From NCBI GenBank assembly GCA_904063045.1, contig CAJFCJ010000023.1, positions 62,001-126,000 on the forward strand: a stretch of 64,000 bases of DNA, in the 5' to 3' direction. The notes beneath the pieces were generated by a model. That model worked only from the letters and a program-made list of their open reading frames with translations. It did not search any database and was not told the DNA's origin. The position numbers and the translations under genes were made by a program. Below are positions 1,816-63,327 of the stretch, piece by piece. How positions within the stretch are numbered: the first letter of the stretch is position 1; each line of letters starts with the position of its first letter. This DNA comes from Dimorphilus gyrociliatus (Eukaryota > Animalia > Annelida).

Positions 1816-3180
1816 TTATATAGTGTATATAGGAATTTTCCGAGATTGGTAATCTATTATGCGACGTGCCTCACGTTTTCCGGAATCAACTGCGCCGTGC
1901 ATTGTTGAATATGATTGTGGTATAGTAGCTTCTCCAGCAAATAAAATTCTAGGAACACTTTTGTCATCAAGAATAGGATCAGAGTAGTTAGCATAATCGA
2001 CAGCTTGTGTTTCCATTGAAACGTAGCTGTAGCATCCTTTGAATAGTTCACTACTGCAAAAGTTATACCTAAAAACATGTTGAGGAAGAGGTATACTATC
2101 ATCATTAAGATACTTTCTTAATAAATTAGTGGACACTTTCATAAGTTCTTCATCAGTGACATTTTCATATTGTAGCGTATATGGACCAACTATCCAACCA
2201 GTTAATATATTTTGTCCAAAACTATCCTTGAAATAGCCTTGAATGGCATCTGTCCAATCTTTTGGGTCATCGGAAGGAATAAATGCAAAATGTTTAGAAT
2301 CCTTCCAAACAGGATTTTCATAGTACAGTGAAAATTTACCAACAAAACCAAAGCCTATTCGATTAATTGAATGTTGTTTCATCTTAGGAAGCGGAGGATC
2401 AAAGAGATGATTAGACTGTTTCAGAACACCCAGTGGAAGAGTGACGAGAACATGATCGGCGTTAAGTTCTAAACCATTTGAACATACAACCTTTACGGTT
2501 GAATTTTTTAGCACAATTTTTTCTACTTTGTGGTTTAGTTTTATTATATCTTTAGTTCTATTGGCTTTATAGATTCTATCTTGGAAATGGTAGCAAATTT
2601 TGGCTAGGCCATCATTAACGCATGTATTGTCTCCAGTACTGATATAAGGGTCGTTTATTGAAACATCTGTCAACAATGCTCCCATGTAGCTTTCATTCAT
2701 TCTGAGCAATTGTTTAAATACATTTTTAGCTTCAAGTAATTCATCGTCTTTGAAGTCTTTATAATATTTAGGGAGTTCTTTATCGAAATATTCAGCCACT
2801 GACATGTTTGGAGAGGCAGTGGAATTCTCAATAGCTTCTAATTCATTTTGTATTCTATAAAATAATTCACAGCATTTATTTGAAATTGCCTCTTTAATTC
2901 GTTTACCATTTGATTCATAAAAGCTACATTCTCGATAGCTCGAATTTGAAGTGTTGCATATCGCTTGTGCAATAGCATATGCAGAATTCTCTTTTGTATT
3001 GCCATGAATCCACTGAGCTCCCAGTTCTATCAATTTATCATAAATTTTAATGGTCTTTATCCTGCCTCCAATTTCACTACTAGCTTCCAATATCTTTACA
3101 TCAGCATTGGGATTTATTTCTAGAAGTTCAGTTGCAGCCGCTAATCCTGAGAGACCAGCTCCTATTATTATTATAGACAT
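1816..3180 (-). CDS. Flavin-containing amine oxidase, spermine oxidase / N1-acetylpolyamine oxidase (SMOX/PAOX) family, 454 aa, single coding exon
   Basis: FAD-binding IIIIGAGLSGLAAA...LEA...IGGRIKT, ELGAQWIHG, VLVTLPLGVLK, GFGFVGK (conserved Lys), GCYSY and C-terminal LFAGEAT...STMHGAVDSGKREARRI are all typical of the SMOX/PAOX branch. The ORF is uninterrupted. Confidence 0.92.
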   Translation of the reverse strand: MSIIIIGAGLSGLAAATELLEINPNADVKILEASSEIGGRIKTIKIYDKLIELGAQWIHGNTKENSAYAIAQAICNTSNSSYRECSFYESNGKRIKEAISNKCCELFYRIQNELEAIENSTASPNMSVAEYFDKELPKYYKDFKDDELLEAKNVFKQLLRMNESYMGALLTDVSINDPYISTGDNTCVNDGLAKICYHFQDRIYKANRTKDIIKLNHKVEKIVLKNSTVKVVCSNGLELNADHVLVTLPLGVLKQSNHLFDPPLPKMKQHSINRIGFGFVGKFSLYYENPVWKDSKHFAFIPSDDPKDWTDAIQGYFKDSFGQNILTGWIVGPYTLQYENVTDEELMKVSTNLLRKYLNDDSIPLPQHVFRYNFCSSELFKGCYSYVSMETQAVDYANYSDPILDDKSVPRILFAGEATIPQSYSTMHGAVDSGKREARRIIDYQSRKIPIYTI

Positions 3181-22400: not shown

Positions 22401-25400
22401 CTGGTCTGCCTCAATCAATTTTAAGACCTGAAACTCCTTCCTACTTTTCCGATACTGACGCAGAAGTTCCTAAAATTACATATAAACTATCAAAGGGTGA
22501 GAGTGATTTAAAATCACTCGAACCTATGGTTCCAAACTGGACCGCAAAGCCTTTTAGAAGGTCTTCAGATACTCGAATGGACATCTACAGGTGTGAAAAG
22601 GACTTTAATGGTGATATTTATGAAGATTTAATCAAATTGATTTTTCAGTTCACTTCAAACTGATAACCCTACCATTATTAAAAAATCCCCCATGAAAAGA
22701 CCCGGTGACAGAAGGTGTTTGTTGTTTGTGGTGTTCCGTATCACAATGCAAAGTTCCTTAGGATTCTTAAAAAATGGCGTGAATTTGTTACTTTATTTTT
22801 CATAAAAGGCTTACAAAACCTTCTAATTAACAAGCCTATACAAATTGTGCCATTATAATAGAAATTCCTTATTTTTTGCCTATTGTGATATAAAATGTAG
22901 ACGATCAGATATGACCTCAATACCCATTCAAACAGAATCTCATTATTTTTTTTTATATTCAATTCCAGTCCGATGACACAACATATTCCTCCAAAGCGCA
23001 CTCCAACGCCAACTAGGTTGGAGCATAGTATTGAATTGTCCAAACTAAGTCAATCACCTGCACCTCTCGAAGAGTCCCGAGCTAAAATTATCATGACTCC
23101 ACCATCAACACCACTTAGATCACAATCGCCCGCTGTTGGCTTTTCTACACAACCCGCTTACCAACCAGTGGTTCCTCAAAGACCTTCAGCTCCAGTTCAT
23201 AGAGCTCCTACACCTATTCAGGCTGTAACTATGCCTGTGCAAAGGTCTCAAACTCCAGTCCAGCCTGCAACTTTTAGCCTTAGAATGCCGCAGAAAACAC
23301 CTGCGCCTGCACCTGAGCCTCCCAGACAAAGAGCTCCTACCCCAGTACAGGCTTTTACAATGCCCCTATACCAAGCTACGCAACCGGCCGCTCCATTAAA
23401 AGATAGCTCTTTAAGAAGGATGATAGACGAAGCTGAGAGGTGGGAAGCATACCTGCCCTGAAACTATCTTTCTTGCCTTTTACCCCATTAATATCTTTGG
23501 TTATTCCCCCATTTCATAACTTCCGCATATTTCCCCTTTTTGCTCGAAAACCCTTATTCTACGAAATATTAACATCTTCTCCCAAATTAAAAAAAATTTA
23601 CCTTTCCCAACGTTTTCAAATAATAAAAGTAATATTTAAAAAAATCTATTAACCAACTTTTACAGTAACAACTAATGCCTTCCTCTACTTATCAAATCAA
23701 TTTTCAAGTATAATAATATAGTTGTTATTATTTTTAACAGTACTGGTCAACCTCCTGCCAAGGAGCCCAGATATTCGGAAAGCCCAAGTTTATCTATTGA
23801 AGAATTGATAAAGGAAGGGAAAGAGCCTGAACCTGCAAAAGAGGATATGTTCGATAAAACTAGGCCAATACCTCCTAAATTTAAAGTAACAGCTTCTTAT
23901 TCAAAGAATTTTGATCTTAATTTTTAAATTCATATATTGTTTTTAATTTTAGACACAACTCAAATCAAAGATGAATCTTAAAGAATCTGATAGATGTCAC
24001 TTTGAAAGTCGACTAATACCCATTAATGATCCAGATTTAACTGTTGAGTGGTACAAAGATGGAAAATTATTGAGAGCTGGACATAAATTTAAACCGATGT
24101 ATGACTTTGGATACGTTGCATTAGATATTCTTTACACATACGCAGAAGATAGTGGTGTCTATTTATGCAAAGCAAAGAATAAATACGGAGAGGATACTAC
24201 ACAAGCTGAAATAAAATGTTTTCCAAAAGACAGTGTAATCGAGGAATCTCAGTTACCCGAAGGAATAGACACAGTTCAAAAGATGGAAGCCATGGAAGAG
24301 TTATGGCAAGCACCTGTTGGAGACAGAATCGAAGACGAGCAGGAACATACTGCACCCATATTTGATTTAGTTCCTGAACCAGTTCAATGTAAAGAAGGAG
24401 ATACAGCCAAATTTTTGGTGAAAGTTGCTGGATTTCCGAGACCCAGGGTTACATGGTGGGTTAACAGCTCAATAGCTGTCAATGTAAGTAGTTTAATAAA
24501 TATCATTTAGCTTTGAATATTATCTAAAAAGCAACTTATTGTAGGGTGCTAGATATAAGTTACATTATGACGGAATGCTATATTCCTTGGAAATGCCAAA
24601 AGTTAGAGAATATGATAACGGAACTGTTAAAGTTGTGGCGAGAAACTCATTTGGCGAAGCTGAATGTTCAACTTCTTTGCTCGTGATACCAAGAGAAGAC
24701 TGGAGATCTGCTCTGACGCCGGCTCCCCGATGTGAGCTATACTTTAATAATATTGACAAAGAAATAATAAATTTTAATTTATATACTTAATTGAATTTTA
24801 GCCACTGTTCAAGTCGAACTGGATAAGCACAAGAATGTTGAATTAAGAAGCGTTGAATTAGATGAAAAATTGAAGAAACCTAAAGCAACGGTATCCGAAT
24901 TGAGGGCATTTGAAAGAGGTAGTCATTAATATGGTAGTATATAGAGGTAAAAATTATTTGCTTATAAAATTTCCAGACACTCAAGACCGAGCCCGACTAA
25001 AGAAAGATGAAGAAGTACTTCAAGCGTATCAAAACATAAATTGGCAGCATGCTACAATGGCTCATCAAAAATCAACTGCAGAGTTGCGTGAACACTCACC
25101 GCTTCTTGATAAGGAGTCGATAGTTCACGTAGAAAGAGCCAAAGCTATGCTTCAAATGGTCTCCGAATATAGAGATGAAGCAGCAAACAGACAATTTCAA
25201 CATAGTAAACCCATTGAAAAGCAACCACCTACGTTTTTAATGCCTTTGCAATCAGTAGTAACCAAGGAAGGCGATGCCATCAGGTAAACTTTGACACTTT
25301 AATACTGTAGTTCGTTTCTAACTAATATTTTTATTGCTAAAGAATGGAAGTTCATTTTACTGGTCTTCCAACTCCTCAAATTCAGTGGTTTAGAGAGGGA

Positions 25401-43400: not shown

Positions 43401-46400
43401 ACTAACAGCTGCTTCGCAAGACAAAAAATTGACAAAATCAGATGAAATATCTGAAGAAGTACAAGTTGAATTAACGGACAAACAAAAATCCCTTCCTGAA
43501 AGTGAAGTTGTTAAATCAACAGATACAGATAAAGAAAAACTGGAAGCAGTCAGTATCGTACCCAAAGAAGAAACCAAAGTTCTATCTAAAAAAAGTGAGG
43601 TTGTCGTAGAAACTATATCAAAATCCGATTCGATAGAACTTTCTGAAGTAGCCCAAGAAGAAGTTATTGAATCAGAAGTTACAGAAGCTAAAATTGCAAC
43701 GAAAAGGCCTACAAAGGCTGCAGAACAAATATCTGATATCAATCTAGAGATAACAGACAAAAGTAAATCTCTAGAATCTACAGACGAAGCTAATCAAATT
43801 GTAGTCTCAAGCGAAACAACAAATGTTAAAATAGAAAAACCAAAGCCCACGCAAGCAGAAACAACTTTTGAGCAACAAAAAATAGAGAATACGGATAAAA
43901 GTGCTTCAATTGAAGTAACTGAACAAGCAGTTGAATCCAGCGAAGATGCTCAAGTTATTCAAAAACAATCCAGTCAAATTACAGAAACTAATATTTCTTT
44001 AATTAAGACTGAGATGAATATTGAATCAACCGATGCAGAATTACAAGCTAAACCGTCCGAAAGAGCAGATGAAAGCGAAATCACTTTAGATATTGGTCAA
44101 GCAAAATCTGACACGCCAGTAGAAACATCAACTGCGACTCTTCAAACAAAGATAATTACAGAATCGACATCTGTCGAACCCGAAATGAAACCAACAGAAA
44201 CTGCTGAGCAAAGTGAAATCACGTTAGAAATTGCTCAAGCTAAAACTGATAAAAAAATTGAGACAACCACAGCTACACTGGTCACAAAAATGATGACAGA
44301 GTCAACTGATGCTGAAATGGTTATTAAGCCATCAGAAACTGCCGAACAAAGTGAGATTACAATTGACATTGCAGAGGCTAAAGCAGATAAACCAATCGAA
44401 ACAACCACTGGAACATTTGTTACCGAATTAAAAACGGAATCTACTGATACTGAAATGGTCATTAAACCATCCGAAACAGCCGAACAATCTGAGACAACTG
44501 TAGATATCTCAACAGCCCAAACAGATAAACCTATTGAAACAACCACTGGAACATTTGTAACAGAATTGAAAACTGAATCTACTGATACTGAAATGGTTAT
44601 TAAGCCATCAGAAACTGCCGAACAAAGTGAGATTACAATTGATATTGCAGAGGCTAAAGCAGATAAACCAGTAGAAACAACCACTGGAACATTTGTAACT
44701 GAATTGAAAACTGAATCTACTGAAGCTGAAATGGTTATTAAACCATCCGAAACAGCCGAACAATCTGAAACAACTGTAAATATTTCTACAGCTCAGACAG
44801 ATAAACCAGTAGAAACAACCACTGGAACATTTGTAACAGAATTGAAAACTGAATCTACTGATACTGAAATGGTCATTAAACCATCCGAAACAGCCGAACA
44901 ATCTGAAACAACTGTAGATATTTCTACAGCTCAGACAGATAAACCAGTGGAAACAACCACTGGAACATTTGTCACTGAATTGAAAACTGAATCTACTGAA
45001 GCTGAAATGGTTATTAAACCGTCAGAAACAGCTGAACAAAGTGAGATTATGATGGAAATCGGTAAAGTTAAAACTGATAAGAAAATTGAGACGTCAACTG
45101 CAACGCTTGTTACTAAACTGACAACAGAATCAACTGACACTGAGCTACAAGCCAAACCTACAGAACAAGCGGAACAAACGGAAATTATTCTTGATATAGG
45201 TGAAGCAAAATCTGATAAACCAGTTGAGGCATCTACTGCTTTGTTAGTAACTAAGATAACAACAGAATCAACCGATTCGGAACTGCAGACTAAACCCTCA
45301 GAAAAAGCTGAGCAAAGCGAAATAATAGTAGAAGTTGACAAGGCCATAGCTGATCAGAAAATTGAAACCTCAACAGCTACTTTAATAGGCAAAATGATAA
45401 CAGAATCAGCTGATTCAGAAATTCTGATAAAATCTTCGGAAATAGCTGAAGAGTCTAATGTCGTAGTTGAGACTGCAAAATCTCATTCAGATAAACCAGT
45501 TGAAACGACAACGGCCACTCTTATATCAGATTTAAAAACGGAATCAACCGATGCAGATTTACAAAAAAATCCGTCAGAGATAGCTGAACAAAGCGAAATC
45601 ACACTTAACATTGCAAAAGCTAGATCCGACAAACCGGTTGAGACAACGACCGGAACATTTATCACAGAAATGAGAACCGAATCCACTGAAGCTGAAATGA
45701 CTATTACGTCATCAGAAACTGCTGAAGAAAGTGAAATTACTTTGGACATTGGTAAAGCTAAAACCGATAAGAAAATTGAGACAACCACAGCTACGCTTGT
45801 CACAAAAATGTCCACAGAATCTACTGACACAGAAATGGTTATTAAACCGTCGGAAACAGCGGAACAATCTGAAACAACTGTAGATATTTCTACAGCTCAG
45901 ACAGATAAACCAGTAGAAACAACCACTGGAACATTTGTCACTGAATTGAAAACTGAATCTACTGAAGCTGAAATGGTTATTAAACCATCCGAAACAGCCG
46001 AACAATCTGAAACAACTGTAGATATTTCTACAGCTCAGACAGATAAACCAGTAGAAACAACCACTGGAACATTTGTAACAGAATTGAAAACTGAATCTAC
46101 TGATACTGAAATGGTTATTAAACCATCCGAAACAGCCGAACAATCTGAGACAACTGTAGATATCTCAACAGCCCAAACAGATAAACCTATTGAAACAACC
46201 ACTGGAACATTTGTCACTGAATTGAAAACTGAATCTACTGAAGCTGAAATGGTTATTAAACCATCTGAAACAGCCGAACAATCTGAAACAACTGTAGATA
46301 TTTCTACAGCTCAGACAGATAAACCAGTGGAAACAACCACTGGAACATTTGTCACTGAATTGAAAACTGAATCTACTGATACTGAAATGATTATTAAACC

Positions 46401-49400
46401 GTCAGAAACAGCTGAACAAAGTGAGATTATGATGGAAATCGGTAAGGCTAAAACTGATAGAAAAATTGAGACAACTACAGCTACTCTTGTTGCTGAATTA
46501 ACAACTGAATCTGCTGAACCAAAGGATGAAGCAAAAGAACTGGAAATGGCCAAGGAAAGTGAAATTAAACAAGAAATTTCGAAAGCAAAAGCAGAACAGC
46601 CTGTGGAGTCAACAAGCATTTTAGAAACAAAAGCAATAACAGAAATGGCTGATACCGAATTTGTTGTAAAGAAAGTAGAAACAGCAGATGAAAGTGAAAT
46701 TTATCAAAGTACAGAAAAAGCCAATCAGGGAGAGGTGGTCGAATCAACTACATCTATGATAGTTACTAAAATGGAATTAGAGTCAACAGATTCTGGAATG
46801 GCCATTAAGCCATCAGAAAAGGCGGAAGAAACAGAAGTGTCATTCAATGTTGAGCATGCTACATCAGACAAACCTATTGAAACGATTGCGACAACTCAAG
46901 TCACTGAATTGAAAACCGAATCTGCTGATGCAGAATTAAAAATAAAGCAGTCTGAGACTGCCGAATTGCTTGAAACAGAAACAGAAACGGCAACTGTTCA
47001 AGTTAAAAAACCGCAGGAATCAAAAACAAATGTTTTTGTCGATGAAATTTCTGTAGAAACAGCAGAAACTACAGAAAATAAGTCACCTGAACAATCTTTG
47101 GAATCGGTCGCTGATTTGGAACTGCATAAATCTTCTGTCAAATTACCTGAAGGTTCACAAACAGTAACACAAATTACTGAAGTTGCTGTTCAAAAAACAA
47201 CAAAAGTTCAACAAATTAAGCCTAGTGAATCGGTCGAAGAGAGTGAAGTATCTATAGAAACTTCGGAAGCTACAGTATTGCATCCAAAAGAAGCTAACGT
47301 AAAAGTTCAAGAATCTGTCATTGCCACAGATATTACAGAATTTGCCGATGAAGTGAATAAGTCTGATTTAGCGAAACTGTCCGACATTAAGTCAGAAACT
47401 TCGACTGTCGATATATCCCAACCTAAAGAAACACAAGCTTCAGTTATGATAAAAGAAATGACCACTGAAGTAACGAGTGAAACTGTGGAAGAAAAACAAC
47501 CTGAAACTCAAACTGAATCAATTGTCAGCGTACAACTAGAAAAGTCTTCTAAAAATCTCCCACAAGAAAGTCAGACTGCTGCTCTGGGTGCCGAAATTAC
47601 ACTAGAAAGCTCAAAAGAACAAGCAGAGTTAACTGTTTTAGAAAAAGCGTCTGAAACTGTAAATGTTACGGACAATAAATTAGCAGCTGTAACAAGTCAA
47701 ACGGTTGAAAGTACTGCAGGTTTATTAGTAGCTGACTTATCCGTTGAAAATACTGATGCAACTATGCAACTAAAACCAACAGAAGAGGCAAAAGAGAGCA
47801 ATGTCGAAATGGCAACTGAGCAAGCCACTCTGGAATTGAAAAAGGAAACTCAAGTTTCCACTCAAGAAACAAATGTAACAGAAAATGTAACCCTTACGAA
47901 GCCTGACGACAAAGAGATTAAAACTTCAACGGAATCAACAGTAATTACTCAGTTAGAAGAATCTAAAGTGGAGTTTCCCAAAGAAACTAAGGTTGAAGTT
48001 GGAGAGGCTAAACTAAAACTTGAAGAAAGCAAAAAAACAAAACAAAAACCGGCTGAAAAAGTTGAAGAATCCTTTACTCAAGTCAAACTAAAGAAAGTTA
48101 AAAAAGATGTGAAACCAGCAATAACAAAAACACAAAAAAAATCTACAACAATTGAGGTATCTGACGAAACAGATGCGATTAAAACTGAGGAAGCAACTTC
48201 TTCTCAAGTGGTTACAGAAACTATGATTGCTTCTAAAAAAGAGAAGCCTAAAACAAAAAAAGGGTCAGAGGTATCAGAAGAAGTAGTTGTGTCATTAAAA
48301 AGTGCAGCTCCTTCGGAAACAGGTAAGGTTTCCCCAACCGAGAGTGAAAATACCCAATTGCATGGATCTTTAAGTCCTCTTGAAACTGCTCCAGAACCCG
48401 AAGAAACTGTTGATACTATGTCAATAAGTGAATCGAATGTATCTTTAAATATTGAAGAACAAAATTTAAAAACTGAGAAAGCCAATATTAATATTCCCCT
48501 GCACCTAACCACTGACACCCAAGACGTTTCCAAAGTGGTATTTGAGGCAGAACAACCAAACGTGGAAAACTTGGTTGAAACTTCAATTGATGAACCTAAA
48601 GGTGTAAAAGATTATAGTAGCGAGGTTACTCTTCCAGATAGTGTAGAAGAAACTATTGAATCAAAATTGGAAGATACAGAAACAAAACTTTCTAGACATG
48701 ATACTAGTTCAACTGAATATGTCAAAGCTTCAACCAAGAAGCAAAAAGAGTCAATATCAGACGTTCAAGAAGCAGTCACAATTTCCGAATCTTCCATCAT
48801 GGACGTAGATTACGAAAAGCCTCTTGAGAGTGTATCTGAATCAATTACAGTATCTGATCTATTGATTGCAGACAAGCCTGTTCAAGAACAGACTGTAACT
48901 TCAGAGACGACTATAACGACAAATGAACCTGTCGAAAATATAAACCAAATCACAGAAGTTGGGTTAGAAATATCCAGTGAAAAGGTAGCCCTCACGTCTG
49001 AAATTAATAAGCCAGAACAGCATTCCAGCGCAACTGCTGAATCATTTGAGGAAGGTCAAAGTGAGGAAATTAGTGAATACTCATCGTTGACTATACAGCC
49101 TAAAGAGGATGTAATAGATATAGATAAAGATATAAAGATTGATATTATTCAGCAAGAAACGACCGTAGGAAAGGGAAAGTTAATTGAAGAGATAGTAGAC
49201 ATCGATAAAGACTCTATAGTACCGAGTAAAGCTACAGAAGAGTTAGTTAAACCCTCAGAAACTGAAGAAAAAGTAATAGAAAAAATACCAGAGACTATAG
49301 AGTCAGCTTTAATAAGCGAGAATTTAGAATCAAACTTAGACATAGTAGAAGATGCTGATAACGAAAAAGTCAATGTTGTAAAAGATTCCAGCCTACCAAT

Positions 49401-52400
49401 TAGCAAAATTGGTGAGAAATGCATGAAAAATAAGTGGAATAAATATGATATTAATAGATATGAATTTGAATGAAGAAATTGCAAATTTTTACTTTTTTTG
49501 CTTGTTTATAATGGATGAACTTGCAAGAAAGTTGCAAATATTCTTTTTGGTTAAAAAATTCTTTACGTTTATTTCGTTTTGCGTCTTGAACAATAGCATA
49601 TATGTATTTTTATACATATATCGATATATCTACAGTTTTTGTTGTTATATTTTGAACGCGCTTGAACATATAGCCAATACCTTTATTAGAATTAGTTAGA
49701 TTAACACGCTTTCTCTTCAATCTTTGTTAACAGCACGACTATTCCAGATTACCTTAATTTGATGAAAATTTTTTTTTGATGCATTATTTTATTATTATTC
49801 ATCTTTTTTTTATACAGAAACAGCAGAAGCTTCGTTAAGTATCAAGTGAGTTTTTCTCTTCAACCTAAATTGAAAGTAATGTTAGTTCTTAAATTAAATT
49901 TTTTGCTATATTTGTTTTAGGCCAAAAACTCAAGAAAGTGAAACAACAATTGATATTAAACCTGAAAAAGAAACAATTGAGGAGAGTAGCACGGAAACGA
50001 CTTTGAAAGGTATTTTTGATATCTGATAGTGCTTCAAAAAGAACTTTTCTATTTAACTGATTGAAGTTTAAAATTCCCCAAAACACTAACAAATGCATGA
50101 TCCATCTATCTTTTCCTTCTATTTTAGCATCAAAACGACAAGATGAAGATAGAGAAGAGAGTAAAAGCATCTCTGTAACTGTTAGCAGTATGCCAGATGA
50201 CTTCGATAATTCTCTTGACGATATTACGTCAGAGTTTTCTATAGAGAAACCTGTTGACGAAGTTAAGAAAGACTGCACAACAATTTACATTTCTACTGCA
50301 AATTTCAAACCTGATAGTGATGAAGTCATGTCACTGCATGAAGGAGAAAGGGTTGAAATAAAAAATATTAACGAAAGTGATAAACTATGGCTTGTAAAGA
50401 AGTGGTTTAATACTAACTCTGGTCTTGTACCGTCAAAATATCTTCAAAGAAGACAAGATGTAGAGGATGCTGTTGACAAACAAATTCTAGCTTACGCAGA
50501 AAAGTTAGCAGTACCAGAAGAAACAGCTAAGCATAAAGGCTATCCTCAAGCAGCTCAAATTGTTAGACCTTTAAGTTCAGATAAGGTTAAAGACGGAGAT
50601 TCAGTTTACCTTGAATGTTCTATCGTAGCTAACCCTGAACCAATTGTTGTTTGGTTTAAGGAAGGTGTTCTTTTGGAAGCCAGTCATGAGTTTGAACAAG
50701 TCTTTGACGGTACACTTTGTAAATTGATGATAAAAGAAGTTTACCCTGAAGATACAGGATTTTACGGAGTATTAATAAAAAATCAATACGGATATGACTT
50801 TAGTGCTGCTGAAATAATAGTTGTTGAACGTGGTGCAAGTACAGGTATTAGAGTTTGAATGTGCCTTAACTTCATCTTTTTCCCCGAAAAAAGCATATTT
50901 TTACAATTTCTGTTCGATTATGTGTAATAATTATTGCTATTTGTTTATTAGGAAAAGAACCAGTAGAAGAGAAAATTAAACCAACTATGAAAACTAAACC
51001 TAAGGCTCAAACTGCTGATGAAAACGCAGATGCAACATTTACGTGCACCATTCTATCCAAACCTAAACCAGAGGTAAGTGAATTTTAAGTATTTTGGCTG
51101 AATAATGTTTTAATGATTAAGTAAAATCATTTCTATTCTGTATATATACTTTATTATGTACGAATGTGTCTTTGCATTAAATTAGGCTACTTGGATCTTC
51201 GAAGACAAAACTATCACTTTATCCGATAAATATAAACCGGACATATCAGAAACAGCCGAAAATACTTATAAGGTGTGCTTGGCCATTAAAAAGATTCAAC
51301 TATCAGATGCCGGAAGTTATAAACTTTTTGTTAAAAATACTGAAGGAGAATTAAAGAGTAGCGTGACTTTATTTGTGAACGGTTTGTTTAATTATTTAGA
51401 ATTATTTAGCTCTTAACAAAAGTTTGGTGATTAATGTAGAACGAAAAGACTCCAAAGACCTTCGTTCTCAACTAAAAAAGAAGACCGAAAAGTAAGTAAA
51501 TAGTTTGTGGTCCAATGTATAGTATAATTAATATTGTTTGGATTTGTTACCCCTTCCTTCGCATGAATAGAAACCCTCAGTTATCTAAAGACCAAGAACA
51601 AACAGATTTTCGTTCAGTTTTACGTAAAAGTTCAATGTGAGTGACTTTGAATGTTATATGTATTTATTATTTGCTATAACTATGCATATTACAATACTTT
51701 CTCCCGCTTTTCAATAATTTAACAAAAAGAGTAATGAACTGTAATACATTTTTAACTTGTCATGTCTTTATAATTGTCTTTTTTTTTTTACAGAAAAGAA
51801 CCCAAGAAGAAGGAACCAGAGGTAAAGGGTGGTGAACAGCATGATTTTAGAAATGTCTTGCAAAAAAATAGTAGCGAGGTTAGGGTGTGTTTTATCTTTT
51901 CTAGTAAAATTCTTCCCAGAAGATATGCTATTTTATAAAGTCTTAAGCATGACTCCTACTTTTTTCCGTCAAAAAGGAAGAATGCAAATAAAATAAAATC
52001 TATTCAATTTTTTTCTCCATATTTTAATATGCAATTGTTTTCTTTTTTCTTCAATCTAACACATTTTGTTGTCAATTGCATGCAGATATCCGACAATCAA
52101 AAATCCAAGTTTGAAGTGAAACAACATGACTTTAGAAACCTTTTAAAAACTGTAGAGGTTGTTATTAACGGTCTTTTTCATTGAATGAGAAAGCCCCGTT
52201 GTTATACTGTATAAGTATTTATGTATTATTTAATTCAACTTGCAGAAGGAGCCAAAGGTTGAAATTTCATTGAAAGATAAAACCATTAAGGAAGGTGAGG
52301 AAGTGACTTTTATTTGTCAATTGTCTGGAAACCCTTTACCTGATGTTTCCTGGTATCGTGAAGATGAATTAATATTTTCTAATGATGTTTATAATATGTC

Positions 52401-55400
52401 CGATAATGGCCGAGGGTTGCATGCTTTAAAAATCGGACTTGCTTTGGCTGGAGATGACGGCGTTTATGAGATACGTGGCAGAAATAACCTCGGAACTGTT
52501 AAAAGTTCTGCTGTTTTACGTATAATAGGTTTGTCCCATTACTAAAACTAAATTAATAATATTTACCTTTACCCGTTTTCTTACTAAAAAAATAAGATAT
52601 AAATGAATTTAAAGTTAAAATTGTTTGAATTAATACTTATATCTTGCTTGAGTAAGATGTAGTTCAAAAATAATTAACATAATCTTATTTTCTTTTCTTG
52701 TTTCATTTATAGACGAAGCGGCACTAGAAGAAAGTTCGGTAAGCTCTTCTGTCAGTTCTTATGATCCCAATCGCATTCAAACAGAAACATCGCATGACAT
52801 ATCCCGTAATGACAATTCTAAGCATGAAGATGACAATAGTTTTACTAACGAACCTTTAGCTATTCATGACAATGACATTATCCAGTCAAATATTGAAGAT
52901 TTAGTTCCCATCGATGTCACCGATAACACACACACAGAAAATGACTCAGTCAGTTCATATGAAAAGGAGTACGAAACTGAGTCGTTTGAGCCAGGAACAT
53001 TCACAAGAGATGATATTGAAGAGTTGGAAGAAGACGAAGCTGAAGCAGCAGATGAAGAACTCGTAAAAGAAACAATAGATGATACCAAAATAGAAACTGA
53101 ATCGTCCAGTGGTTCAAGCGCAAAAGAATTATATGAGAATTTTGATGAGGGATCAGAAGAAAAGCCACCGTTTGATATATGTGAATCAACAAGTGAAAGT
53201 GAACCAGCAAGTTCTTATATAAAAGAATTACATGCAGAAACTACAGGGGCACCAACTGAATATCAATTATCCCCAGTTGAACTATCAAAAAAAGAGAAAA
53301 GTGGAAAGGATAAATCAGTCGAAATTTCTGATGTAAAGGTCATATAGAAAGGATTAAAATTAGTCTCTCTTAGCTCTTCTATCTTTCCTGTGTATATAAA
53401 ATTTAAATATTAAAAGAAAAACATTCAACCTTCTTTTGCTTCAGACTTTCTTTAATAGAACCTGTTAAAAATATTATCCATCTTTACAGCTTCTTGATTA
53501 TCCCACATCAATAAATGTGGAGCTTTTAATAGAAAGAACATCTCAAACTTGCGCCTTTGAAAGAGAAACCAATATTGTTTTTATAAAAGATACTAAGGTT
53601 ACATTGTAGTAATATAGTTGTTAACCTTATGGTGTTTTTTTTTTACCTTGGAATATTTTACCCATAGTTGAAAAGTTTCTTTTATAATATTCAATATTTT
53701 GTTTCTGGATTTTTACCAGTTTTCTTATTTACCATACATTAAATTTCATTTTATTTTACCTGTTGTGTTTATTTTCTCAATATTTTACCTTTTATTAAAA
53801 TATTTTCAAGAAAATAGTAAAAGTATCTCTCATATTTATTTATAAACTTATTTAACAACAGAAACCAAAGGAGGAACCAAAAAGTAAAGAACCATCAAAA
53901 GCTCCTGAACTATTAGAGCCACTCGTAGATAAAAAACTGCCAAAAACCGGTGAAGAAGTGAAATTGACTTGTAAGATAAGTGGATATCCTAAACCGGAAG
54001 TTAATTGGTTAGATTTTTTGTTAGATAATTATTAAATGGTGTTAAATTTATTACTATCGTGTTTATGTGTTTTAGGTACTCGTCTGGAATTCTTATTTCG
54101 GATACTAAAAAGTTTACTAGAACCGAAAAAGGGGATACTTATACACTTATTATTAAGGACGTTCAAGAAAGGGATTGCGTGGAGTATACAATAAATGCCA
54201 AAAATGAGGCTGGGGAAGTTAATTCCAGTTGCATCATAATTTTGCCTCAAGGTTTGTTAATGTGCCTGTAATAGCCTGTAAGCTGCAAAACTGATTGGCT
54301 TTATTTTCTATTAAAATTAATTTTAAGACCTTTTCCTAACTATGATTTTTTATACGTTTTCGTGCACTTTTTTCTGATGCATTATCCAAATACAACGCAA
54401 CAATTTTTTATTTCAAGATTACTAAAAAAAAATATTTTTGTTCAAGTTGCTTGAATATTTTTTTTTTACCTTCGGTTCACGCGTGCACTTTTTGCTTTGA
54501 TTTTTTTTTCTTTAACAGTCTCGTCGAGTGAAATTAAGCTTTTTCCTCCCATACTTTTCACCCGTATATATTGTATTTTTATATGCATCCCCAGCATATG
54601 TGAACAAAACCATTCTTTGTATCAAAAAAGAAAGGAAAAATCTTTGTCTCTACAAGGAAAAATGTTGAACAGGGATAGCTTAAAAAAATGCTTTAATCCG
54701 TGTATTATTTCGTTTTTATAAGATAATAATCAAATAATTAGTGTAGTTCAAAAAAAAAAATAAACAAACAGCACAAAAACATAAAATATACGGCACTCTA
54801 TTAGACTCAAAACTGTTATCTTTATATTATGTTTTTCTCAAGCTAATCGGCTTTCTTCAACAAAAAATAGGCTTGGCTATAAAGGTGATTTTAGCCTAGT
54901 TATGTTATTTTTTTTTCTGGTAGTTATACTCTCAACCGTATATAGTATGCTATTGTTATTGCAAAGCTCTTTTAGGAAAGGAATTCAAAGTATTTTTGTT
55001 GTTGGTAAATTAAGGCTAATTTGCAATTGAAATTCATTACTTTTTTCGGTTGAAAATGATAGGTTTTTTTATTACTATACAAACTTACAATATATGGCTT
55101 TTTCTCTCTCTCTCTCTCTCTCTTTTTATGAAAGCGAATTGTTTAAATAGTTTTATAAACATTAAAGATAATTCTTCTTTCAGTAATTGAATTAAGCAAA
55201 AATCCTTTGAATAATCTTCTGTACAAAAGAGATATTCTTTTATCAGCTTCTTAGTTAAGTAATAAAACAGGAGGATTTGTATAACATAATTTTGAAATTT
55301 ACATAGAAATATGTCATATAAATATTAAATATATTCTTAACCACTTTCCCCTTTTCGGATATTGTCACTTATCTTCTCAAAACATATATTTAATCTTTGA

Positions 55401-61400: not shown

Positions 61401-63327
61401 TTAAAAAGAAAGATGCGGGAACGTACACGGTTACTTTAACAAATGACTTTGGTGAGGAAACTACCTCAGTTACCCTAATTGTAACTGATAAACCAGAGGA
61501 AGCGGAAGATTGGAAGAGCTCCCTTAAGCATACTGAGGTAAAGGAAAAGGTAGATACAGAAGAGGAATATGATTGGAGAAATAAACTAAAGAAGGCTAAA
61601 GGAAATTTAGATGATGTAGAGGGAGAGGAACTTACATTCCAACTCAAAAAGGTTGAACAAACAGAACCTAAAGGTCAACTTAAAGAAGCCAAAATGGAAG
61701 TTGAAGAAACCCAAATGAAACCAACAACAATGAAATTTGAAAAGAGAGAACCTATAGAACTTTCCAAGAGAAAGGATCAAGATAAAAAAGAAAAGGCTCC
61801 AGTAGAAGAAGAAGCAATAGAAAAATCAAAATACCAAAGACAAAAGAAAGAACCAGCCGAACCTCAGGTTGAGGAGAAAGGATTTAAAATAGGAAAAGTG
61901 GAAGTAATAAAAATTTCTTTTCACTTAATTGACTTGATAAATTGCAAAAAAGTAACATTTTCTTTTTGTTTTCAGTATAAATTCATAAGAGAACTTACCG
62001 ATCAGAAAGTGAAAGAAACGGACTTTGCAGAATTCGAATGCGAAGTTAATAAGCCAAAAATACCCGTTAGATGGCTTATTGAAGGTGTTGAAGTTGTTCC
62101 CAGTCCAAAATATCAAATTTTTGCTGAAGGAAAAATTCACAGATTAGCTATTAATAAAACAAAACCAGAAGACGAAGGTCAAGTTATGTGTGAATTTAAA
62201 AATCTAACAACAACCGCAAACCTCTACGTTATACGTGAGTATATTAATATCTTAATATCATAATTAGGAAAGAGAAAACTTTCCTATTGGTTAAGCTATT
62301 GATTACATAATAATAGAAATATATATATAATACTGTTAGTCTAATAGAAACGTTCTAAACAAAAATTATAATTAAGAAAAGTCTCTTTAATTTGCTTAAT
62401 TAATTTATTCATTTATTTATTATAAAAATTTATATTAATTTGATTAATTTGCACAATTTTTGCACTGCTTTGTTCTTTTTGTTTTGTAAAAACACAGCCA
62501 TCATACCTGAATTTACTCTAAACTTTAACGATGAAAGAGTTGTTGAACATGCCGACGCTACTTTTACTTGTAAATTGAATGAAGATCTCGAAATAGACTG
62601 GTTTCACAAAGGTCAACCAGTAAAGAAGAATGACAAAAAATACAAAATTATTGATAGTGGGGTTGAGAAGACTTTAATGATTACTGATTGTCTCAAAGGA
62701 GACGCGGATAAAGTAAAAGCAGTTTGCCGTAACGTCAGCTGTGAAGCCAACTTAACGGTTGAAGGTTTGTTGAAAAAAGTGTCGTCTACATTGTCATTCA
62801 GAGCGTCCATGTTCTCGTTACGTTTTTTGTATAGATATCTATATTGCTTGAAGTGCTTTAACAAAAATGTGATCATTTACGCTATAAGTTTCAACAAAAA
62901 TCAGAACAATCAAATAGTCAAATAATCAATCAATTAATCAAATTTGCGCGTAAATTCTTCGGAAAAAATAAGGTCAAGTTCTGATAATGTTCGAGCGAAA
63001 ATACCTCTTACTAAATGCATGTTCCTCTATTCAGTGTTTTTTTTTTCTTTACAGCCTTTTCAACTGAATTTTCAAAGCCGTTAGAAAATACGAATTGTCG
63101 AGAGAATTCAACGGCTGAAATAGTTTCTTATACTTATCATTATCATCCTCCTTCCTCCATTTTGTGGTTTATAGATTCAATTCCAGTTGTTGAATCTTCC
63201 AAATATGAAATTAATTCAGACGGTTTGAAACATACGTTAAAAATTCATCGAGTATCCAAAATGGACGAGGGTCAAATAACAGTATCGTGTAACGATGAGG
63301 AATCAACGGCTAAATTAACAGTCGATG
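4165..63327 (+). CDS. ttn: Giant titin/sallimus-like sarcomeric protein gene (spectrin-repeat N-terminus, about 45 Ig, E/T-rich repeat regions, SH3); 3'-incomplete
   Basis: About 92 GT-AG exons traced by hand with consistent phase; the summed CDS of 35,239 nt ends in phase 1 at the donor GAT G|GTCAGT (63327/63328). I-set Ig motifs (P-x-F...C/V-x-G-x-P-x-P-x-(V/I)-x-W...D-x-G-x-Y/F-x-C-x-A-x-N) recur throughout. The symbol denotes family, not proven orthology. Confidence 0.9.
4334..4343 (+). promoter_or_regulatory. MEF2 consensus site (CTAAAAATAG) in intron 1
   Basis: Perfect CTA(A/T)4TAG 65 nt after the exon-1 donor of a muscle gene. The AT-rich background makes chance occurrence plausible. 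Confidence 0.4.
8329..8454 (+). CDS. Mutually exclusive exon variant A (42 aa, phase 0-0)
   Basis: TIDNIMRKEDDFFPAIAAELGSSASNTNEYRKKLEEFRPFVR; acceptor TTAACAG|ACAAT, donor CGG|GTAAAT. Confidence 0.8.
8489..8617 (+). CDS. Mutually exclusive exon variant B (43 aa, phase 0-0)
   Basis: TITWIMEEEKNLFRPYIAGYLGKSPSDIQTMKEKLHKFQPIVK is paralogous to variant A; same acceptor TTAACAG|ACAAT; only 34 nt from the variant-A donor. Confidence 0.8.
10262..17534 (+). CDS. First Ig array (7 I-set Ig domains)
   Basis: Exons 10262-10441 (3' part), 10529-10749, 11382-11681, 12227-12381 and 15965-17534. The third Ig is split by a 3.58-kb phase-0 intron (...NSHVHK|VTVAEHQ...). The last Ig (from about 17258) resembles titin Z1. 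Confidence 0.88.
18654..18905 (-). CDS. Nested antisense ORF, 83 aa, leucine-zipper/coiled coil plus basic patch
   Basis: Lies in intron 17535-19205. Heptad a/d positions L5, L9, I12, L16, I19, L23, L26, Q30, L33, I37, M40, followed by KSKRKSK. ATG in ttcATGG context, with a TCAGT Inr-like motif about 90 nt upstream on the minus strand. Confidence 0.45.
   Translation of the reverse strand: MANPLEHDLSVINKKLDHIMETLKILTSNQEKLAKDINAMLEEDLKSKRKSKSYDPTMIKRYEDPVIFKVNSRSITGCKKDAN
19206..24731 (+). CDS. Region colinear with vertebrate titin Z2 to I1, including Pro/Ser-rich linkers and one kettin-type Ig
   Basis: Exons 19206-19493, 19554-19720, 19924-20390, 20474-21002, 21074-21234, 21285-21616, 21671-21967, 22038-22101, 22252-22590, 22649-22714, 22969-23439, 23741-23885, 23953-24483, 24545-24731. 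Diagnostic strings: PPSFIDRLQS, HKIVVNEDGIHSLII, EPEKKLVIPR, HFESRLIPINDP...DFGYVALD, IEESQLPEG, PEPVQCKEG, REDWRSAL. Confidence 0.88.
24802..33653 (+). CDS. Second Ig array (about 13 Ig) with Q/P/T- and E/T/S-rich spacers
   Basis: Exons 24802-24918, 24977-25283, 25343-25560, 25623-25936, 26007-26127, 26187-26378, 26449-26781, 27107-27278, 27340-27971, 28031-28274, 28338-28716, 28784-28943, 29425-31008, 31114-31398, 31678-31837, 31891-32108, 32168-32665, 32720-32850, 32914-33285, 33347-33653; all phases are compatible. Confidence 0.85.
33719..37690 (+). CDS. Giant acidic elastic-type exon 33719-37254 (3,536 nt) plus exon 37314-37690
   Basis: Acceptor TTTTCAG|33719 (VFEYIQDSEE...), donor GAC|GTAAGA at 37254. 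E/T/V/K-rich with no Ig motifs; PEVK-analogous. Confidence 0.88.
34261..37250 (+). repeat. Cryptic, diverged 45-46-aa coding repeat (about 20 units)
   Basis: Recurring units such as DTFEEGIQVVPEQPTEEETKLKLEQPE..., EELQEGVEVTPEKTTEDQIDIEYS..., DTIDETAEISQDISKEEEVVLELS... (45 aa counted); visible at protein level only. Confidence 0.7.
37889..37922 (+). CDS. Candidate alternative terminal exon 1 (RLGEKFKREDI*)
   Basis: ACTAAC branch-like motif, then ATCTCCAG| acceptor. Phase 2 matches the donor at 37690. TAA at 37920-37922 and AATAAA at 38085-38090. Confidence 0.5.
38441..39497 (+). CDS. Two Ig domains plus linkers
   Basis: Exons 38441-38664, 38722-38837, 38899-39013, 39066-39497. Confidence 0.85.
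39742..39860 (+). CDS. Candidate alternative terminal exon 2 (KLIHPDEQILIEENYDIEVEIDFKWNANSAVRKAFLQTI*)
   Basis: TTTTACAG| acceptor in phase 1 matches the donor at 39497. Protein-like codons, TAA at 39858-39860, followed by about 1.3 kb of T-rich UTR-like sequence with AATAAA at 40231-40236. Confidence 0.6.
41229..41911 (+). CDS. 36-nt micro-exon plus a divergent Ig domain
   Basis: Exons 41229-41264 (RELEEKEEKRSE), 41492-41751 (KPKIIKSLRNTECRIGESVALKLRV...VKWY...DLGLYK) and 41854-41911. None appears in the ORF track. Confidence 0.75.
41999..49411 (+). CDS. Giant 7,413-nt exon, E/T/S/K-rich elastic-type segment
   Basis: Acceptor TTTCCAG|41999, in frame with ORF 42343-49473; donor ATT G|GTGAGA at 49411; phase 1-1. 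Confidence 0.9.
44023..46506 (+). repeat. 138-bp (46-aa) coding tandem repeat, 18 exact-period units plus further diverged units to about 47,050
   Basis: Unit starts (GAA of EST...) at 44023, 44161, ... 46369, 46507 at an exact 138-nt period. Consensus ESTDTEMVIKPSETAEQSETTVDISTAQTDKPVETTTGTFVTELKT. Confidence 0.95.
49818..51381 (+). CDS. Micro-exons, SH3 domain (about 50277-50450) and two Ig domains
   Basis: Exons 49818-49845, 49921-50009, 50128-50844, 50952-51073, 51186-51381. SH3 hallmarks MSLHEGERVEI, LWLV and GLVPSKY. An SH3 after the elastic region is also a feature of Drosophila Sallimus. Confidence 0.85.
51440..52157 (+). CDS. Four micro-exons each encoding a DFRxxL-type motif
   Basis: 51440-51491 (DLRSQL), 51571-51636 (DFRSVL), 51794-51878 (DFRNVL), 52086-52157 (DFRNLL). 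Canonical splice sites with continuous phase (1-2, 2-2, 2-0, 0-0) into exon 52246. Confidence 0.85.
52246..54251 (+). CDS. Ig, acidic spacer, Ig
   Basis: Exons 52246-52528, 52713-53338, 53490-53597 (symmetric, less certain), 53862-54007, 54076-54251. Confidence 0.8.
55103..55122. repeat. (TC)n microsatellite
   Basis: About 10 TC units in intron 54252-57288. Confidence 0.9.
56015..56095 (+). repeat. GA-rich polypurine tract
   Basis: AAGAGAGAAAGAGAGAGCGAGGGGGAAAGAGATAGAG..., almost pure purine; a polypyrimidine counterpart lies at about 57114-57170. Confidence 0.8.
56762..56846 (+). CDS. Candidate internal first exon (or cassette exon) MLVEMRIVHIQIALTHDVEEISIEKLIY-G
   Basis: ATG after an A-run, upstream in-frame TAA at 56693-56695. 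Donor G|GTTTGT (the same hexamer as several donors in this gene) in phase 1 matches acceptor 57289. Confidence 0.4.
57289..63327 (+). CDS. Distal Ig array (10 Ig) including an I80/N2A-like Ig and short constitutive-type Igs
   Basis: Exons 57289-57479, 57646-57751, 57903-58235, 58443-58475, 59034-59143, 59214-59457, 59633-59662, 59982-60096, 60165-60355, 60440-60727, 60827-60938, 61018-61903, 61976-62234, 62498-62764, 63055-63327. Confidence 0.87.
59589..59615. repeat. (TA)n microsatellite
   Basis: About 13 TA units just upstream of micro-exon 59633-59662; other TA-rich runs lie at about 15150-15205 and 58538-58570. Confidence 0.9.

What the first reader, a model, noticed from the sequence alone, without database searches (positions are those of the whole stretch)
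51440..52157. Cassette of four DFRxxL actin-binding-type motifs, one per micro-exon, in a titin-like protein
Seen: DLRSQL (51457), QTDFRSVLRK (51605), QHDFRNVLQK (51843) and QHDFRNLLK (52128), spaced 23, 27 and 26 aa apart. Two exons are symmetric (66 and 72 nt), and an in-frame alternative donor (GAG|GTAAAG at 51821) would drop motif 3. Established: DFRxxL motifs are the F-actin-binding elements of smooth-muscle MLCK (three copies about 28 aa apart, e.g. DFRSVL), and a DFRxxL has been reported in molluscan twitchin. Inference: a splice-tunable, multivalent thin-filament tether (1-4 motifs) downstream of the elastic region and SH3, acting as an adjustable brake or catch-like element. I do not recall this arrangement being described for titin/Sls. 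The cassette is invisible in the ORF track.
Basis: partly seen in the sequence, partly recalled or inferred. Interest (0 to 1): 0.82.

Follow-up and report, generated by a model that had tools for sequence, protein, structure and literature searches.

The report
DFRxxL micro-exon array in worm titin

Summary
Four GT..AG micro-exons (51440-51491, 51571-51636, 51794-51878, 52086-52157; 52, 66, 85 and 72 nt) fill the linker between two I-set Ig domains, downstream of PEVK-like exons and an SH3.

- **Expression:** a 1737-nt RNA contig joins all four exactly as read.
- **Motifs:** they encode DLRSQL, DFRSVL, DFRNVL and DFRNLL, spaced 23, 27 and 26 residues apart.
- **Conservation:** a related species (83% protein identity) keeps exon sizes, splice sites and all four hexamers, while the introns drift.
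- **Match to MLCK:** the motifs fit the wider consensus seen in 150 Ig giants (E-Q-x-DFR-x-[VL]-L-basic). Tandem arrays in the 318 proteins fetched occur only in MLCK-annotated proteins and two unnamed ones, never in those annotated titin, Sls, twitchin or obscurin.
- **Splicing:** one low-depth contig from a second study skips exon B, uses the predicted inner donor after 51821 and skips exon D. It carries one extra A, which would shift the frame.
- **Indirect signs of regulation:** excess synonymous conservation, weak donors, and conserved GCATG just before both symmetric exons.

Actin binding and a catch-like role are inference only. I class this as a new variant of a known motif system. Earlier notes of this scan cover the same gene (CCDC141-like head, Z-disc colinearity) but not this cassette.

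The parts
50126..50844 (+). Exon encoding the SH3-like domain plus one I-set Ig, upstream of the cassette.
   Evidence: The RNA contig's piece and the next joint set its boundaries. Pfam gives I-set at 2.4e-17 and SH3_9 at 3.7e-4, below the curated cut-off. The SH3 part matches SH3 regions of hemichordate and crinoid titin-like proteins.
51186..51381 (+). Second half of the Ig domain that precedes the cassette. It ends in a phase-1 donor.
   Evidence: Pfam I-set 4e-7. Joints 51071->51184 and 51380->51439.
51440..51491 (+). Micro-exon A, 52 nt. It carries DLRSQL seven residues after the Ig and has a consensus donor (GTAAGT). It is not skippable in frame.
   Evidence: Conserved as L001 1804-1855 with the same hexamer.
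51571..51636 (+). Micro-exon B, 66 nt, a symmetric cassette. It carries EQT-DFRSVL-RK followed by S-S, making an R-K-S/T-S site kept in both species.
   Evidence: Included in the X2 contig and skipped in X1 contig 3. L001 1959-2024.
51794..51878 (+). Micro-exon C, 85 nt, carrying EQH-DFRNVL-QK. An inner in-frame donor after 51821 (GAG|GTAAAG) removes the motif.
   Evidence: The full form is in X2. The inner donor is used in X1 contig 3 (joint 51819+2 -> 52244+2). The inner donor sequence is identical in L001.
52086..52157 (+). Micro-exon D, 72 nt, a symmetric cassette carrying KQH-DFRNLL-KT. Its donor is weak (GTTGTT).
   Evidence: Included in X2 and skipped in X1 contig 3. L001 2524-2595. 17 of 18 conserved residues keep the same codon.
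52246..52528 (+). Ig exon that follows the cassette.
   Evidence: Pfam I-set 5.8e-18. Joints. 86% identical ORF product in L001.
51561..51565 (+). GCATG element about 10 nt before the acceptor of exon B.
   Evidence: Conserved in L001 at 1949. The region holds 4 GCATG against 0.37 expected.
52078..52082 (+). GCATG (TGCATG) element 8 nt before the acceptor of exon D.
   Evidence: Conserved in L001 at 2516.
24698..24715 (+). Single DWRSAL just after an Ig in the N-terminal part of the same gene. It is the counterpart of the lone DFRSVL of vertebrate titin.
   Evidence: In each of the seven vertebrate or lamprey titins compared, the best match of 24545-24787 is the Ig that precedes the DFRSVL or DFRAVL.
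61571..61588 (+). Single DWRNKL followed by KK, in a charged linker after an Ig of the same gene.
   Evidence: Sequence only; not followed up.

Best explanation
The cassette is a real, expressed, conserved inter-Ig linker of a titin-like muscle gene. Earlier notes of this scan call the animal a small marine annelid; I did not verify that.

The linker is built from four micro-exons that each encode one copy of the MLCK-type D-F/L-R-x-x-L motif. It is Lys-rich and outside any Pfam-matched domain (not folded here).

Most likely mechanism, inferred from MLCK: each motif docks on one actin subunit of the thin filament. With copies 23-27 residues apart, the array would lie along consecutive subunits as a multivalent, salt-sensitive tether that can slide. 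That would couple the I-band part of titin beyond the PEVK-like springs and SH3 to the thin filament, adding drag or stiffness.

The DLRSQL copy and the first 28 nt of exon C are fixed. Exons B and D, and the distal 57 nt of C, can each be left out in frame. Splicing could therefore set the number of exact DFRxxL copies between 0 and 3.

Shown here: exons, expression, conservation, motif match, one skipping transcript. Inferred: actin binding, valency effect, physiological role.
For: **Exon structure and expression**
- X2 contig 7 (1737 nt, 100% identical) joins Ig-A-B-C-D-Ig at exactly the predicted GT..AG sites.
- A second study (X1) shows the Ig-to-A and B-to-C joints.

**Conservation** (genomic contig L001, from a species 83% identical in the SH3-Ig exon)
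- Exon sizes are 52, 66, 82 and 72 nt, with AG/GT kept at every exon and all four hexamers identical.
- Exons are 79-87% identical at the nucleotide level against 57-68% for introns.

**Motif identity**
- In the 150 best Ig giants from the 1.84-billion-protein search, DFRxxL occurs 33 times against 3.2 in shuffles.
- Same-composition controls give 3-7 hits.
- The consensus is [A/E]-E-Q-x-DFR-x-[V/L]-L-[K/R]-[K/R], which B, C and D fit.
- The rabbit MLCK actin-binding peptide reads QQV-DFRSVL-AKK, with motifs 28 residues apart (PMC4586593). This is the same hexamer as exon B.
- Arrays in lamprey, lizard and crinoid MLCK are spaced 26-32 residues apart (starfish 37). The echinoderm arrays start a few residues after an Ig, as here.

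**Function of the motif in MLCK**
- Three motifs bind three actin monomers, with Kd 0.26 uM (PMC2196421).
- Five DXRXXL copies, including a DVR variant, target stress fibres (PMC2185581).
- The 75-residue peptide diffuses along actin (PMC4586593).

**Tunability**
- X1 contig 3 joins A to the first 28 nt of C and then to 52246.
- Codons of conserved residues are identical in 55 of 69 cases in the micro-exons against 168 of 328 in the flanking exons (Fisher p = 1.4e-5).
- Conserved GCATG sits just before the acceptors of B and D.
- By eye, the donors of C and D match the donor consensus poorly, while A's matches it fully.
Against: - No binding data exist for this protein, and the motif is only six residues long.
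- The first copy has L for F. In MLCK only F and V variants are documented in the papers read.
- Spacing of 23-27 residues is a little shorter than the 28-29 of MLCK.
- The only skipping transcript is one 306-nt contig at depth about 5 from a metatranscriptome. It has 9 As where exon A plus exon C give 8, which would shift the frame and stop in the next exon. It may be an assembly error or a non-productive RNA.
- The deep transcriptome X2 shows only the full form at these joints.
- Crinoid, butterfly and crayfish titin/Sls-like proteins with the SH3 lack any DFRxxL after it. The array is therefore lineage-restricted as far as sampled.
- Synonymous conservation and GCATG are indirect and could have other causes.
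Confidence: 0.55

Rival explanations
1. The array is a constitutive linker. All four exons are always included in functional mRNA, and the skipping contig is noise: a mis-spliced, non-productive or mis-assembled RNA. The motifs may still bind actin, but nothing is tuned.
For: - X2, the deep run, shows only the inclusion joints.
- The X1 skipping contig has depth 5.4 and one extra A that breaks the frame.
- X1 also holds an intron-containing piece (51505-51636), so it contains unprocessed RNA.
Against: - The skipping contig uses three canonical GT..AG joints at once, including the very inner donor predicted from the sequence alone.
- All the omitted pieces are in frame.
- The micro-exons show excess synonymous conservation.
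- Conserved GCATG lies at both cassette acceptors.
- The donors of C and D are weak.
- The neighbouring exons of the same gene are alternatively spliced in X2 itself.
Confidence: 0.3
2. The DFRxxL copies are docking sites for a partner other than actin, for instance myosin, a kinase or phosphatase, or a chaperone. Alternatively they act as a phosphorylation-controlled switch, with actin playing no part.
For: - Single DFRxxL motifs sit after Ig domains in thick-filament proteins too, including twitchin-annotated proteins of mosquito, crinoid and acorn worm.
- Motif B is followed by R-K-S/T-S in both species, and the acorn-worm twitchin-like copy by KRRSS.
Against: - The only experimentally defined role of this motif is F-actin binding in MLCK (PMC2196421, PMC2185581, PMC4586593).
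[quoted passage not shown] Its presence in twitchin therefore does not argue against actin.
Confidence: 0.12
3. The motifs are a chance feature of a charged, low-complexity linker and have no specific function.
For: The linker is Lys/Glu-rich, and the motif has only four fixed residues.
Against: - Three exact copies fall within 92 codons, against 1.4 expected in all six frames of 64 kb.
- The hexamers are identical in a second species while flanking linker residues change.
- The motif is enriched tenfold across the family, with a shared extended consensus.
Confidence: 0.03

Closest known systems
DFRXXL / DXRXXL actin-binding array of smooth-muscle and non-muscle myosin light chain kinase (MYLK)
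   Same: - Same core, and in exon B the same hexamer DFRSVL.
- Same upstream Q-rich and downstream basic context.
- Tandem copies about one per 26-29 residues.
- Sits in an unstructured stretch between Ig domains, as in long MLCK, where six Ig precede and others follow.
- A degenerate copy (DVR in MLCK, DLR here) sits beside exact ones.
   Different: - The host is a titin-like giant with a CCDC141-like head, Z-disc-like Ig, PEVK-like exons and an SH3. It is not a kinase of about 1900 residues.
- Spacing is slightly shorter (23-27).
- One motif per micro-exon, with in-frame skipping options. I could not check the exon structure of MYLK here.
- Binding is untested.
Single D[FW]RxxL after the last Z-disc-side Ig of titin
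   Same: - Same gene family and, in this window, the same gene (DWRSAL at 24698).
- The motif follows an Ig by a few residues.
- The flanking Ig is the mutual best match between worm and vertebrate titins.
   Different: - It is a single copy, not an array.
- It lies at the Z/I junction, not beyond the SH3.
- I found no paper that discusses it.
Twitchin-actin tether of molluscan catch muscle
   Same: - A giant Ig protein that links to F-actin and is released by phosphorylation (PMC12040844, PMC7589332).
- Twitchin-annotated proteins fetched here carry a DFRxxL followed by basic/Ser sites.
- Motif B here is followed by R-K-S/T-S.
   Different: - Twitchin is a thick-filament protein with a kinase.
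- It has a single motif, not an array.
- Its control is by PKA rather than by splicing.
- No catch physiology is known for this worm.
Kettin/Sls Ig-linker modules and the titin PEVK-actin interaction
   Same: A titin-family I-band segment that lies along or drags on the thin filament and affects passive stiffness. This rests on established knowledge and was not re-read here.
   Different: Those use Ig plus 35-residue linker repeats or PEVK modules, not DFRxxL. The butterfly Sls and crayfish titin fetched here have no DFRxxL after their SH3.

Membership tests
MLCK-type DFRXXL/DXRXXL actin-binding array | Core D-F(V)-R-x-x-L hexamer. | tested here: met
   Three exact DFRxxL and one DLRxxL. The hexamers are identical in L001.
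MLCK-type DFRXXL/DXRXXL actin-binding array | Three or more tandem copies about 28-29 residues apart. | tested here: met
   Four copies at 23, 27 and 26 residues. MLCK-annotated arrays fetched here range from 26 to 32 (starfish 37). The 28-29 figure is from PMC2185581.
MLCK-type DFRXXL/DXRXXL actin-binding array | Shared flanking context: E-Q-x before the motif, basic residues after it. | tested here: met
   Consensus from 33 motifs in 150 proteins. B = EQT..RK, C = EQH..QK, D = KQH..KT. A fits only on the basic side.
MLCK-type DFRXXL/DXRXXL actin-binding array | Binds F-actin, one motif per actin subunit, abolished by mutating the motif. | not testable with these tools
   Needs co-sedimentation of the expressed linker.
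MLCK-type DFRXXL/DXRXXL actin-binding array | Host protein is a Ca/calmodulin-regulated myosin light chain kinase. | tested here: inconclusive
   No kinase domain lies in the window, and the gene runs on beyond it. The architecture seen is titin-like. I file it as the same motif system, not as an MLCK.
Titin / connectin / Sls family | Long tandem I-set Ig arrays with PEVK-like low-complexity exons. | tested here: met
   Ig ORFs run from about 11.5 kb to 64 kb. Charged repeat exons lie at 33793-37269 and 42343-49473.
Titin / connectin / Sls family | Orthology of specific domains to vertebrate titin. | tested here: met
   In the seven vertebrate or lamprey titins compared, the piece 24545-24787 best matches the Ig that precedes the titin DFRSVL. 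E is 1e-10 to 1e-13, against 1e-3 to 1e-6 for other Ig domains.
Titin / connectin / Sls family | SH3 domain after the elastic region, as in the SH3-bearing titin/Sls-like proteins fetched here. | tested here: inconclusive
   Pfam SH3_9 3.7e-4, below the curated cut-off. BLASTP to SH3 regions of hemichordate (4e-6), crinoid (1e-4) and crayfish (1e-4) titin-like proteins.
Titin / connectin / Sls family | Ig/FN3 super-repeats and a C-terminal kinase. | not tested
These lie outside the window.
Regulated cassette micro-exons | In-frame skippable units with both forms seen in RNA. | tested here: inconclusive
   B (66 nt), D (72 nt) and the distal 57 nt of C are in frame. Inclusion is seen in two studies. 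Skipping is seen in one low-depth contig with a one-base anomaly.
Twitchin-type phospho-regulated catch tether | Actin link released by PKA phosphorylation next to the binding site. | not testable with these tools
   Only a conserved R-K-S/T-S after motif B is seen.

The most novel reading that the evidence does not exclude
D[FW]RxxL may be an ancient thin-filament docking motif of the whole titin/twitchin/MLCK family.
- One copy at the Z/I junction is conserved from annelid to mammal and could explain the long-known attachment of near-Z-line titin to actin.
- This worm lineage has multiplied the motif by exon duplication into a splice-adjustable array inside the I-band spring. That would give titin a dial for thin-filament drag.
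- The MLCK actin-binding head would then be a relative of such a titin array.
Probability: 0.3. Interest if true: 0.8.

Novelty: new variant of a known kind. Interest (0 to 1): 0.6.

Why it matters
How titin-family springs talk to the thin filament is still poorly mapped. A 2011 review notes that the actin and myosin sites of invertebrate twitchin had not been placed (PMC3114093).

This cassette is a compact, testable candidate: a 92-residue linker with three exact copies of the motif whose only experimentally defined role is F-actin binding, in a protein where it has not been described. Splicing options would change its valency in clean steps.

The same survey shows that single copies of the motif follow Ig domains in vertebrate titin, fly titin and twitchins. 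The copy at titin's Z/I junction is shared between worm and vertebrates. That makes a general role for the motif in the family directly testable with simple peptides.

Tried and rejected
- **Word searches for relatives.** Searches with the SH3-Ig exon and with the Ig after the cassette each found only the one close relative. The lineage is thinly sampled, so I could not ask whether other annelids or molluscs have the array.
- **Large searches.** The big representative search, and a region search seeded with the crinoid titin-like SH3 region, ranked proteins by summed Ig matches. They returned few SH3-bearing titin-like proteins: crinoid, hemichordate, butterfly, crayfish. None has DFRxxL after the SH3. 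The one mollusc titin fetched (Elysia, partial) has no SH3 match and no motif.
- **Orthology of the flanking Ig.** I tried to tell whether the Ig after the cassette is orthologous to the Ig after MLCK arrays. The best hit in the starfish protein is indeed the Ig right after its array, but by about 2 bits only. This is inconclusive.
- **Twitchin papers.** The papers that should state the DFRXXL in Mytilus twitchin are not held.
- **Chance.** Rejected as an explanation.
- **Left out.** The joined four-exon peptide was not searched, folded or typed. Exons were handled one by one by reference.
- **Taxon.** The taxon (annelid) comes from earlier notes of this scan and was not verified here.
Full report
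**1. What is in the sequence**

Between two I-set Ig exons (51186-51381 and 52246-52528; Pfam 4e-7 and 5.8e-18) lie four short open stretches. Each is bounded by AG and GT:

| Exon | Coordinates | Length | Phase |
|---|---|---|---|
| A | 51440-51491 | 52 nt | 1 to 2 |
| B | 51571-51636 | 66 nt | symmetric |
| C | 51794-51878 | 85 nt | 2 to 0 |
| D | 52086-52157 | 72 nt | symmetric |

- The preceding Ig exon ends in phase 1 and the following one starts in phase 0.
- One donated base plus 275 nt makes exactly 92 codons with no stop.
- Exact DFRxxL occurs 4 times in all six frames of the window against 1.4 in shuffles, and 3 of the 4 are here. HDFRN occurs twice against 0.02 expected.
- B and D are symmetric.
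- C has an inner donor (GAG|GTAAAG, GT at 51822) that removes 57 nt in frame.
- A and the first 28 nt of C cannot be dropped without a frameshift.

**2. The exons are expressed**

Contigs of two public runs from two studies were laid on 50000-55000.

- **Run X2.** It is 100% identical and very deep, and its contigs are spliced, so it is RNA. One 1737-nt contig joins the SH3-Ig exon, the two halves of the next Ig, A, B, C, D and the following Ig. Every joint is at the predicted position and every intron is GT..AG.
- **Run X1.** This is a coral-reef metatranscriptome, 99% identical with five base differences. It shows the Ig-to-A and B-to-C joints.
- **X1 skipping contig.** A 306-nt contig in X1 goes from A straight to the first 28 nt of C, uses the inner donor, and lands on 52246. 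It therefore skips B, the distal part of C, and D.
- **Caveats on that contig.** Its depth is about 5. It also has one extra A at the A/C joint (nine As where the two exons give eight). That would shift the frame and end at a stop in the next exon. It may be an assembly or sequencing error, or a non-productive RNA.

**3. Conservation**

The only close relative in the protein collection is 83% identical over the SH3-Ig exon. It sits on an 8.5-kb genomic contig, L001.

- L001 keeps all four micro-exons at 52, 66, 82 and 72 nt, with AG/GT at each.
- The four hexamers and the inner donor sequence are identical.
- Exon nucleotide identity is 79-87% against 57-68% for the introns.
- Among residues that are the same in both species, the codon is also the same in 55 of 69 cases in the micro-exons. 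In the flanking SH3 and Ig exons the figure is 168 of 328 (Fisher p = 1.4e-5). Such excess synonymous constraint is expected where RNA-level signals, such as splicing enhancers, overlap coding sequence.
- GCATG, the core of the Rbfox site (from established knowledge), occurs four times in 51382-52245 against 0.37 expected.
- Three of these are conserved in L001: 10 nt before the acceptor of B, 8 nt before the acceptor of D, and inside C.
- By eye, the donors of C (GTTAGG) and D (GTTGTT) match the donor consensus poorly. A has the consensus GTAAGT.

**4. What the motifs are**

The exhaustive search with the SH3-Ig exon returned 150 Ig-rich giants.

- **Enrichment.** DFRxxL occurs 33 times in them against 3.2 in shuffles. 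Scrambled or substituted versions (FDR, RFD, DFK, EFR, DYR) occur 3-7 times.
- **Shared context.** The motifs share the context [A/E]-E-Q-x-DFR-x-[V/L]-L-[K/R]-[K/R]. B (EQT..RK), C (EQH..QK) and D (KQH..KT) fit it.
- **Tandem arrays.** Among all 318 proteins fetched, tandem arrays were found only in proteins annotated as smooth-muscle MLCK (monitor lizard, lamprey, a crinoid, a starfish) and in two unnamed ones.
- **Spacing in those arrays.** In the lizard, lamprey and crinoid arrays the spacing is 26-32 residues, and the two starfish motifs are 37 apart. In the echinoderms the first motif follows an Ig by a few residues, as DLRSQL does here.
- **Rabbit MLCK.** Its actin-binding peptide reads QQV-DFRSVL-AKK, with motifs 28 residues apart (PMC4586593).
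- **Function in MLCK.** Three motifs bind three actin subunits with Kd 0.26 uM (PMC2196421). The five DXRXXL copies of long MLCK include a DVR variant, lie 28-29 residues apart and target stress fibres (PMC2185581). The 75-residue peptide diffuses along actin (PMC4586593).

The worm linker is basic. By my count of the exon peptides it has a net charge of about +7 over 92 residues.

**5. What the gene is**

- The window holds a long + strand gene: spectrin-like exons near 6-9 kb, Ig exons from 11.5 kb, two large charged repeat exons (33793-37269 and 42343-49473), an SH3-like domain, and more Ig.
- Earlier notes of this scan describe it as an annelid titin gene with a CCDC141-like head, colinear with vertebrate titin from Z1Z2 to I1, with FN3 super-repeats further on. 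I did not verify the taxon.
- I did find that the piece 24545-24787 (an Ig end followed by DWRSAL) has its best match in all seven vertebrate and lamprey titins compared at exactly the Ig followed by their single DFRSVL or DFRAVL. E is 1e-10 to 1e-13, against 1e-3 to 1e-6 for other Ig domains.
- The gene is therefore titin-like, and one copy of the motif at the Z/I junction looks orthologous from worm to mammal.
- Single copies also follow Ig domains in fly 'titin', in twitchin-annotated proteins of mosquito, crinoid and acorn worm, and in a scallop MLCK-like protein.
- The SH3-bearing titin/Sls-like proteins of a crinoid, a butterfly and a crayfish have no DFRxxL after the SH3.
- As far as sampled, the array at this place is restricted to this worm lineage.
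- Codon use and residues pair A with B (CGT for Arg, then Ser) and C with D (AGA for Arg, then Asn). This suggests growth by exon duplication.

**6. Mechanism and rivals**

- **Most likely (0.55).** A multivalent, sliding thin-filament tether in the I-band part of titin, with valency set by splicing between 0 and 3 exact copies on top of a fixed DLRSQL.
- **Shown versus inferred.** The exons, expression, conservation, motif match and one skipping RNA are shown. Actin binding and any brake or catch role are inferred.
- **Rivals:**
  - The array is constitutive and the skipping contig is noise (0.3; this bears on tuning only).
  - The motifs dock another partner or act as a phospho-switch (0.12). 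Motif B is followed by a conserved R-K-S/T-S.
  - Chance (0.03).

**7. Novelty**

- The motif and its arrays are known from MLCK.
- I found no paper in the searchable library that mentions the motif in titin or Sls.
- No titin-, Sls-, twitchin- or obscurin-annotated protein among those fetched has an array.
- I class it as a new variant of a known kind: an MLCK-type array inside a titin-like spring, one motif per micro-exon, with splice options.

Noticed in passing
window 24545-24787 (DWRSAL at 24698-24715): An Ig end followed by RE-DWRSAL-TPAPR. Its best match in the seven vertebrate or lamprey titins compared is the Ig followed by their lone QQRE-DFRSVL-RRAPEPK, at about residue 1700-1900 of N-terminal titin models. 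A single D[FW]RxxL at the Z/I junction therefore looks conserved from worm to mammal. I found no paper that mentions it.
   Followed up: partly
window 61571-61588: A further DWRNKL followed by KK, in a charged linker after an Ig of the same gene.
   Followed up: no
window about 52713-53338: The exon after the next Ig has two donors. It ends near 52738 (26 nt) or near 53338 (626 nt). The 600-nt difference is in frame and encodes an acidic stretch. Both forms are in run X2 and the short one is in X1.
   Followed up: partly
window 54251 to 54593 / 57289: The exon ending at 54251 joins either 54593 (contig depth 15) or, in a contig of much greater depth, sequence that matches 57289 onward. This suggests a block of exons that is mostly skipped.
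   Followed up: partly
window 51491/51794 joint in run X1: The skipping contig has nine As where exon A plus exon C give eight. No genomic base explains it. The B-to-C contig of the same run has the normal start of C.
   Followed up: partly
window 51623-51634; L001 about 2011-2022: Motif B is followed by R-K-S-S (R-K-T-S in the relative), a basophilic-kinase-type site. An acorn-worm twitchin-like protein has KRRSS after its DFRSLL.
   Followed up: no
window 1816-3180, minus strand: An intron-less 454-residue flavin amine oxidase gene (Pfam Amino_oxidase 9e-60) lies upstream of the titin-like gene on the other strand.
   Followed up: no
P0038 (3173 aa, source name unknown): A protein with five near-identical modules, each ending an Ig with '...LQLVTV..EE.V-DFRKQL-K.VKQEK', spaced about 340-780 residues apart. 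Here the motif is repeated once per large module rather than as a tight array.
   Followed up: no
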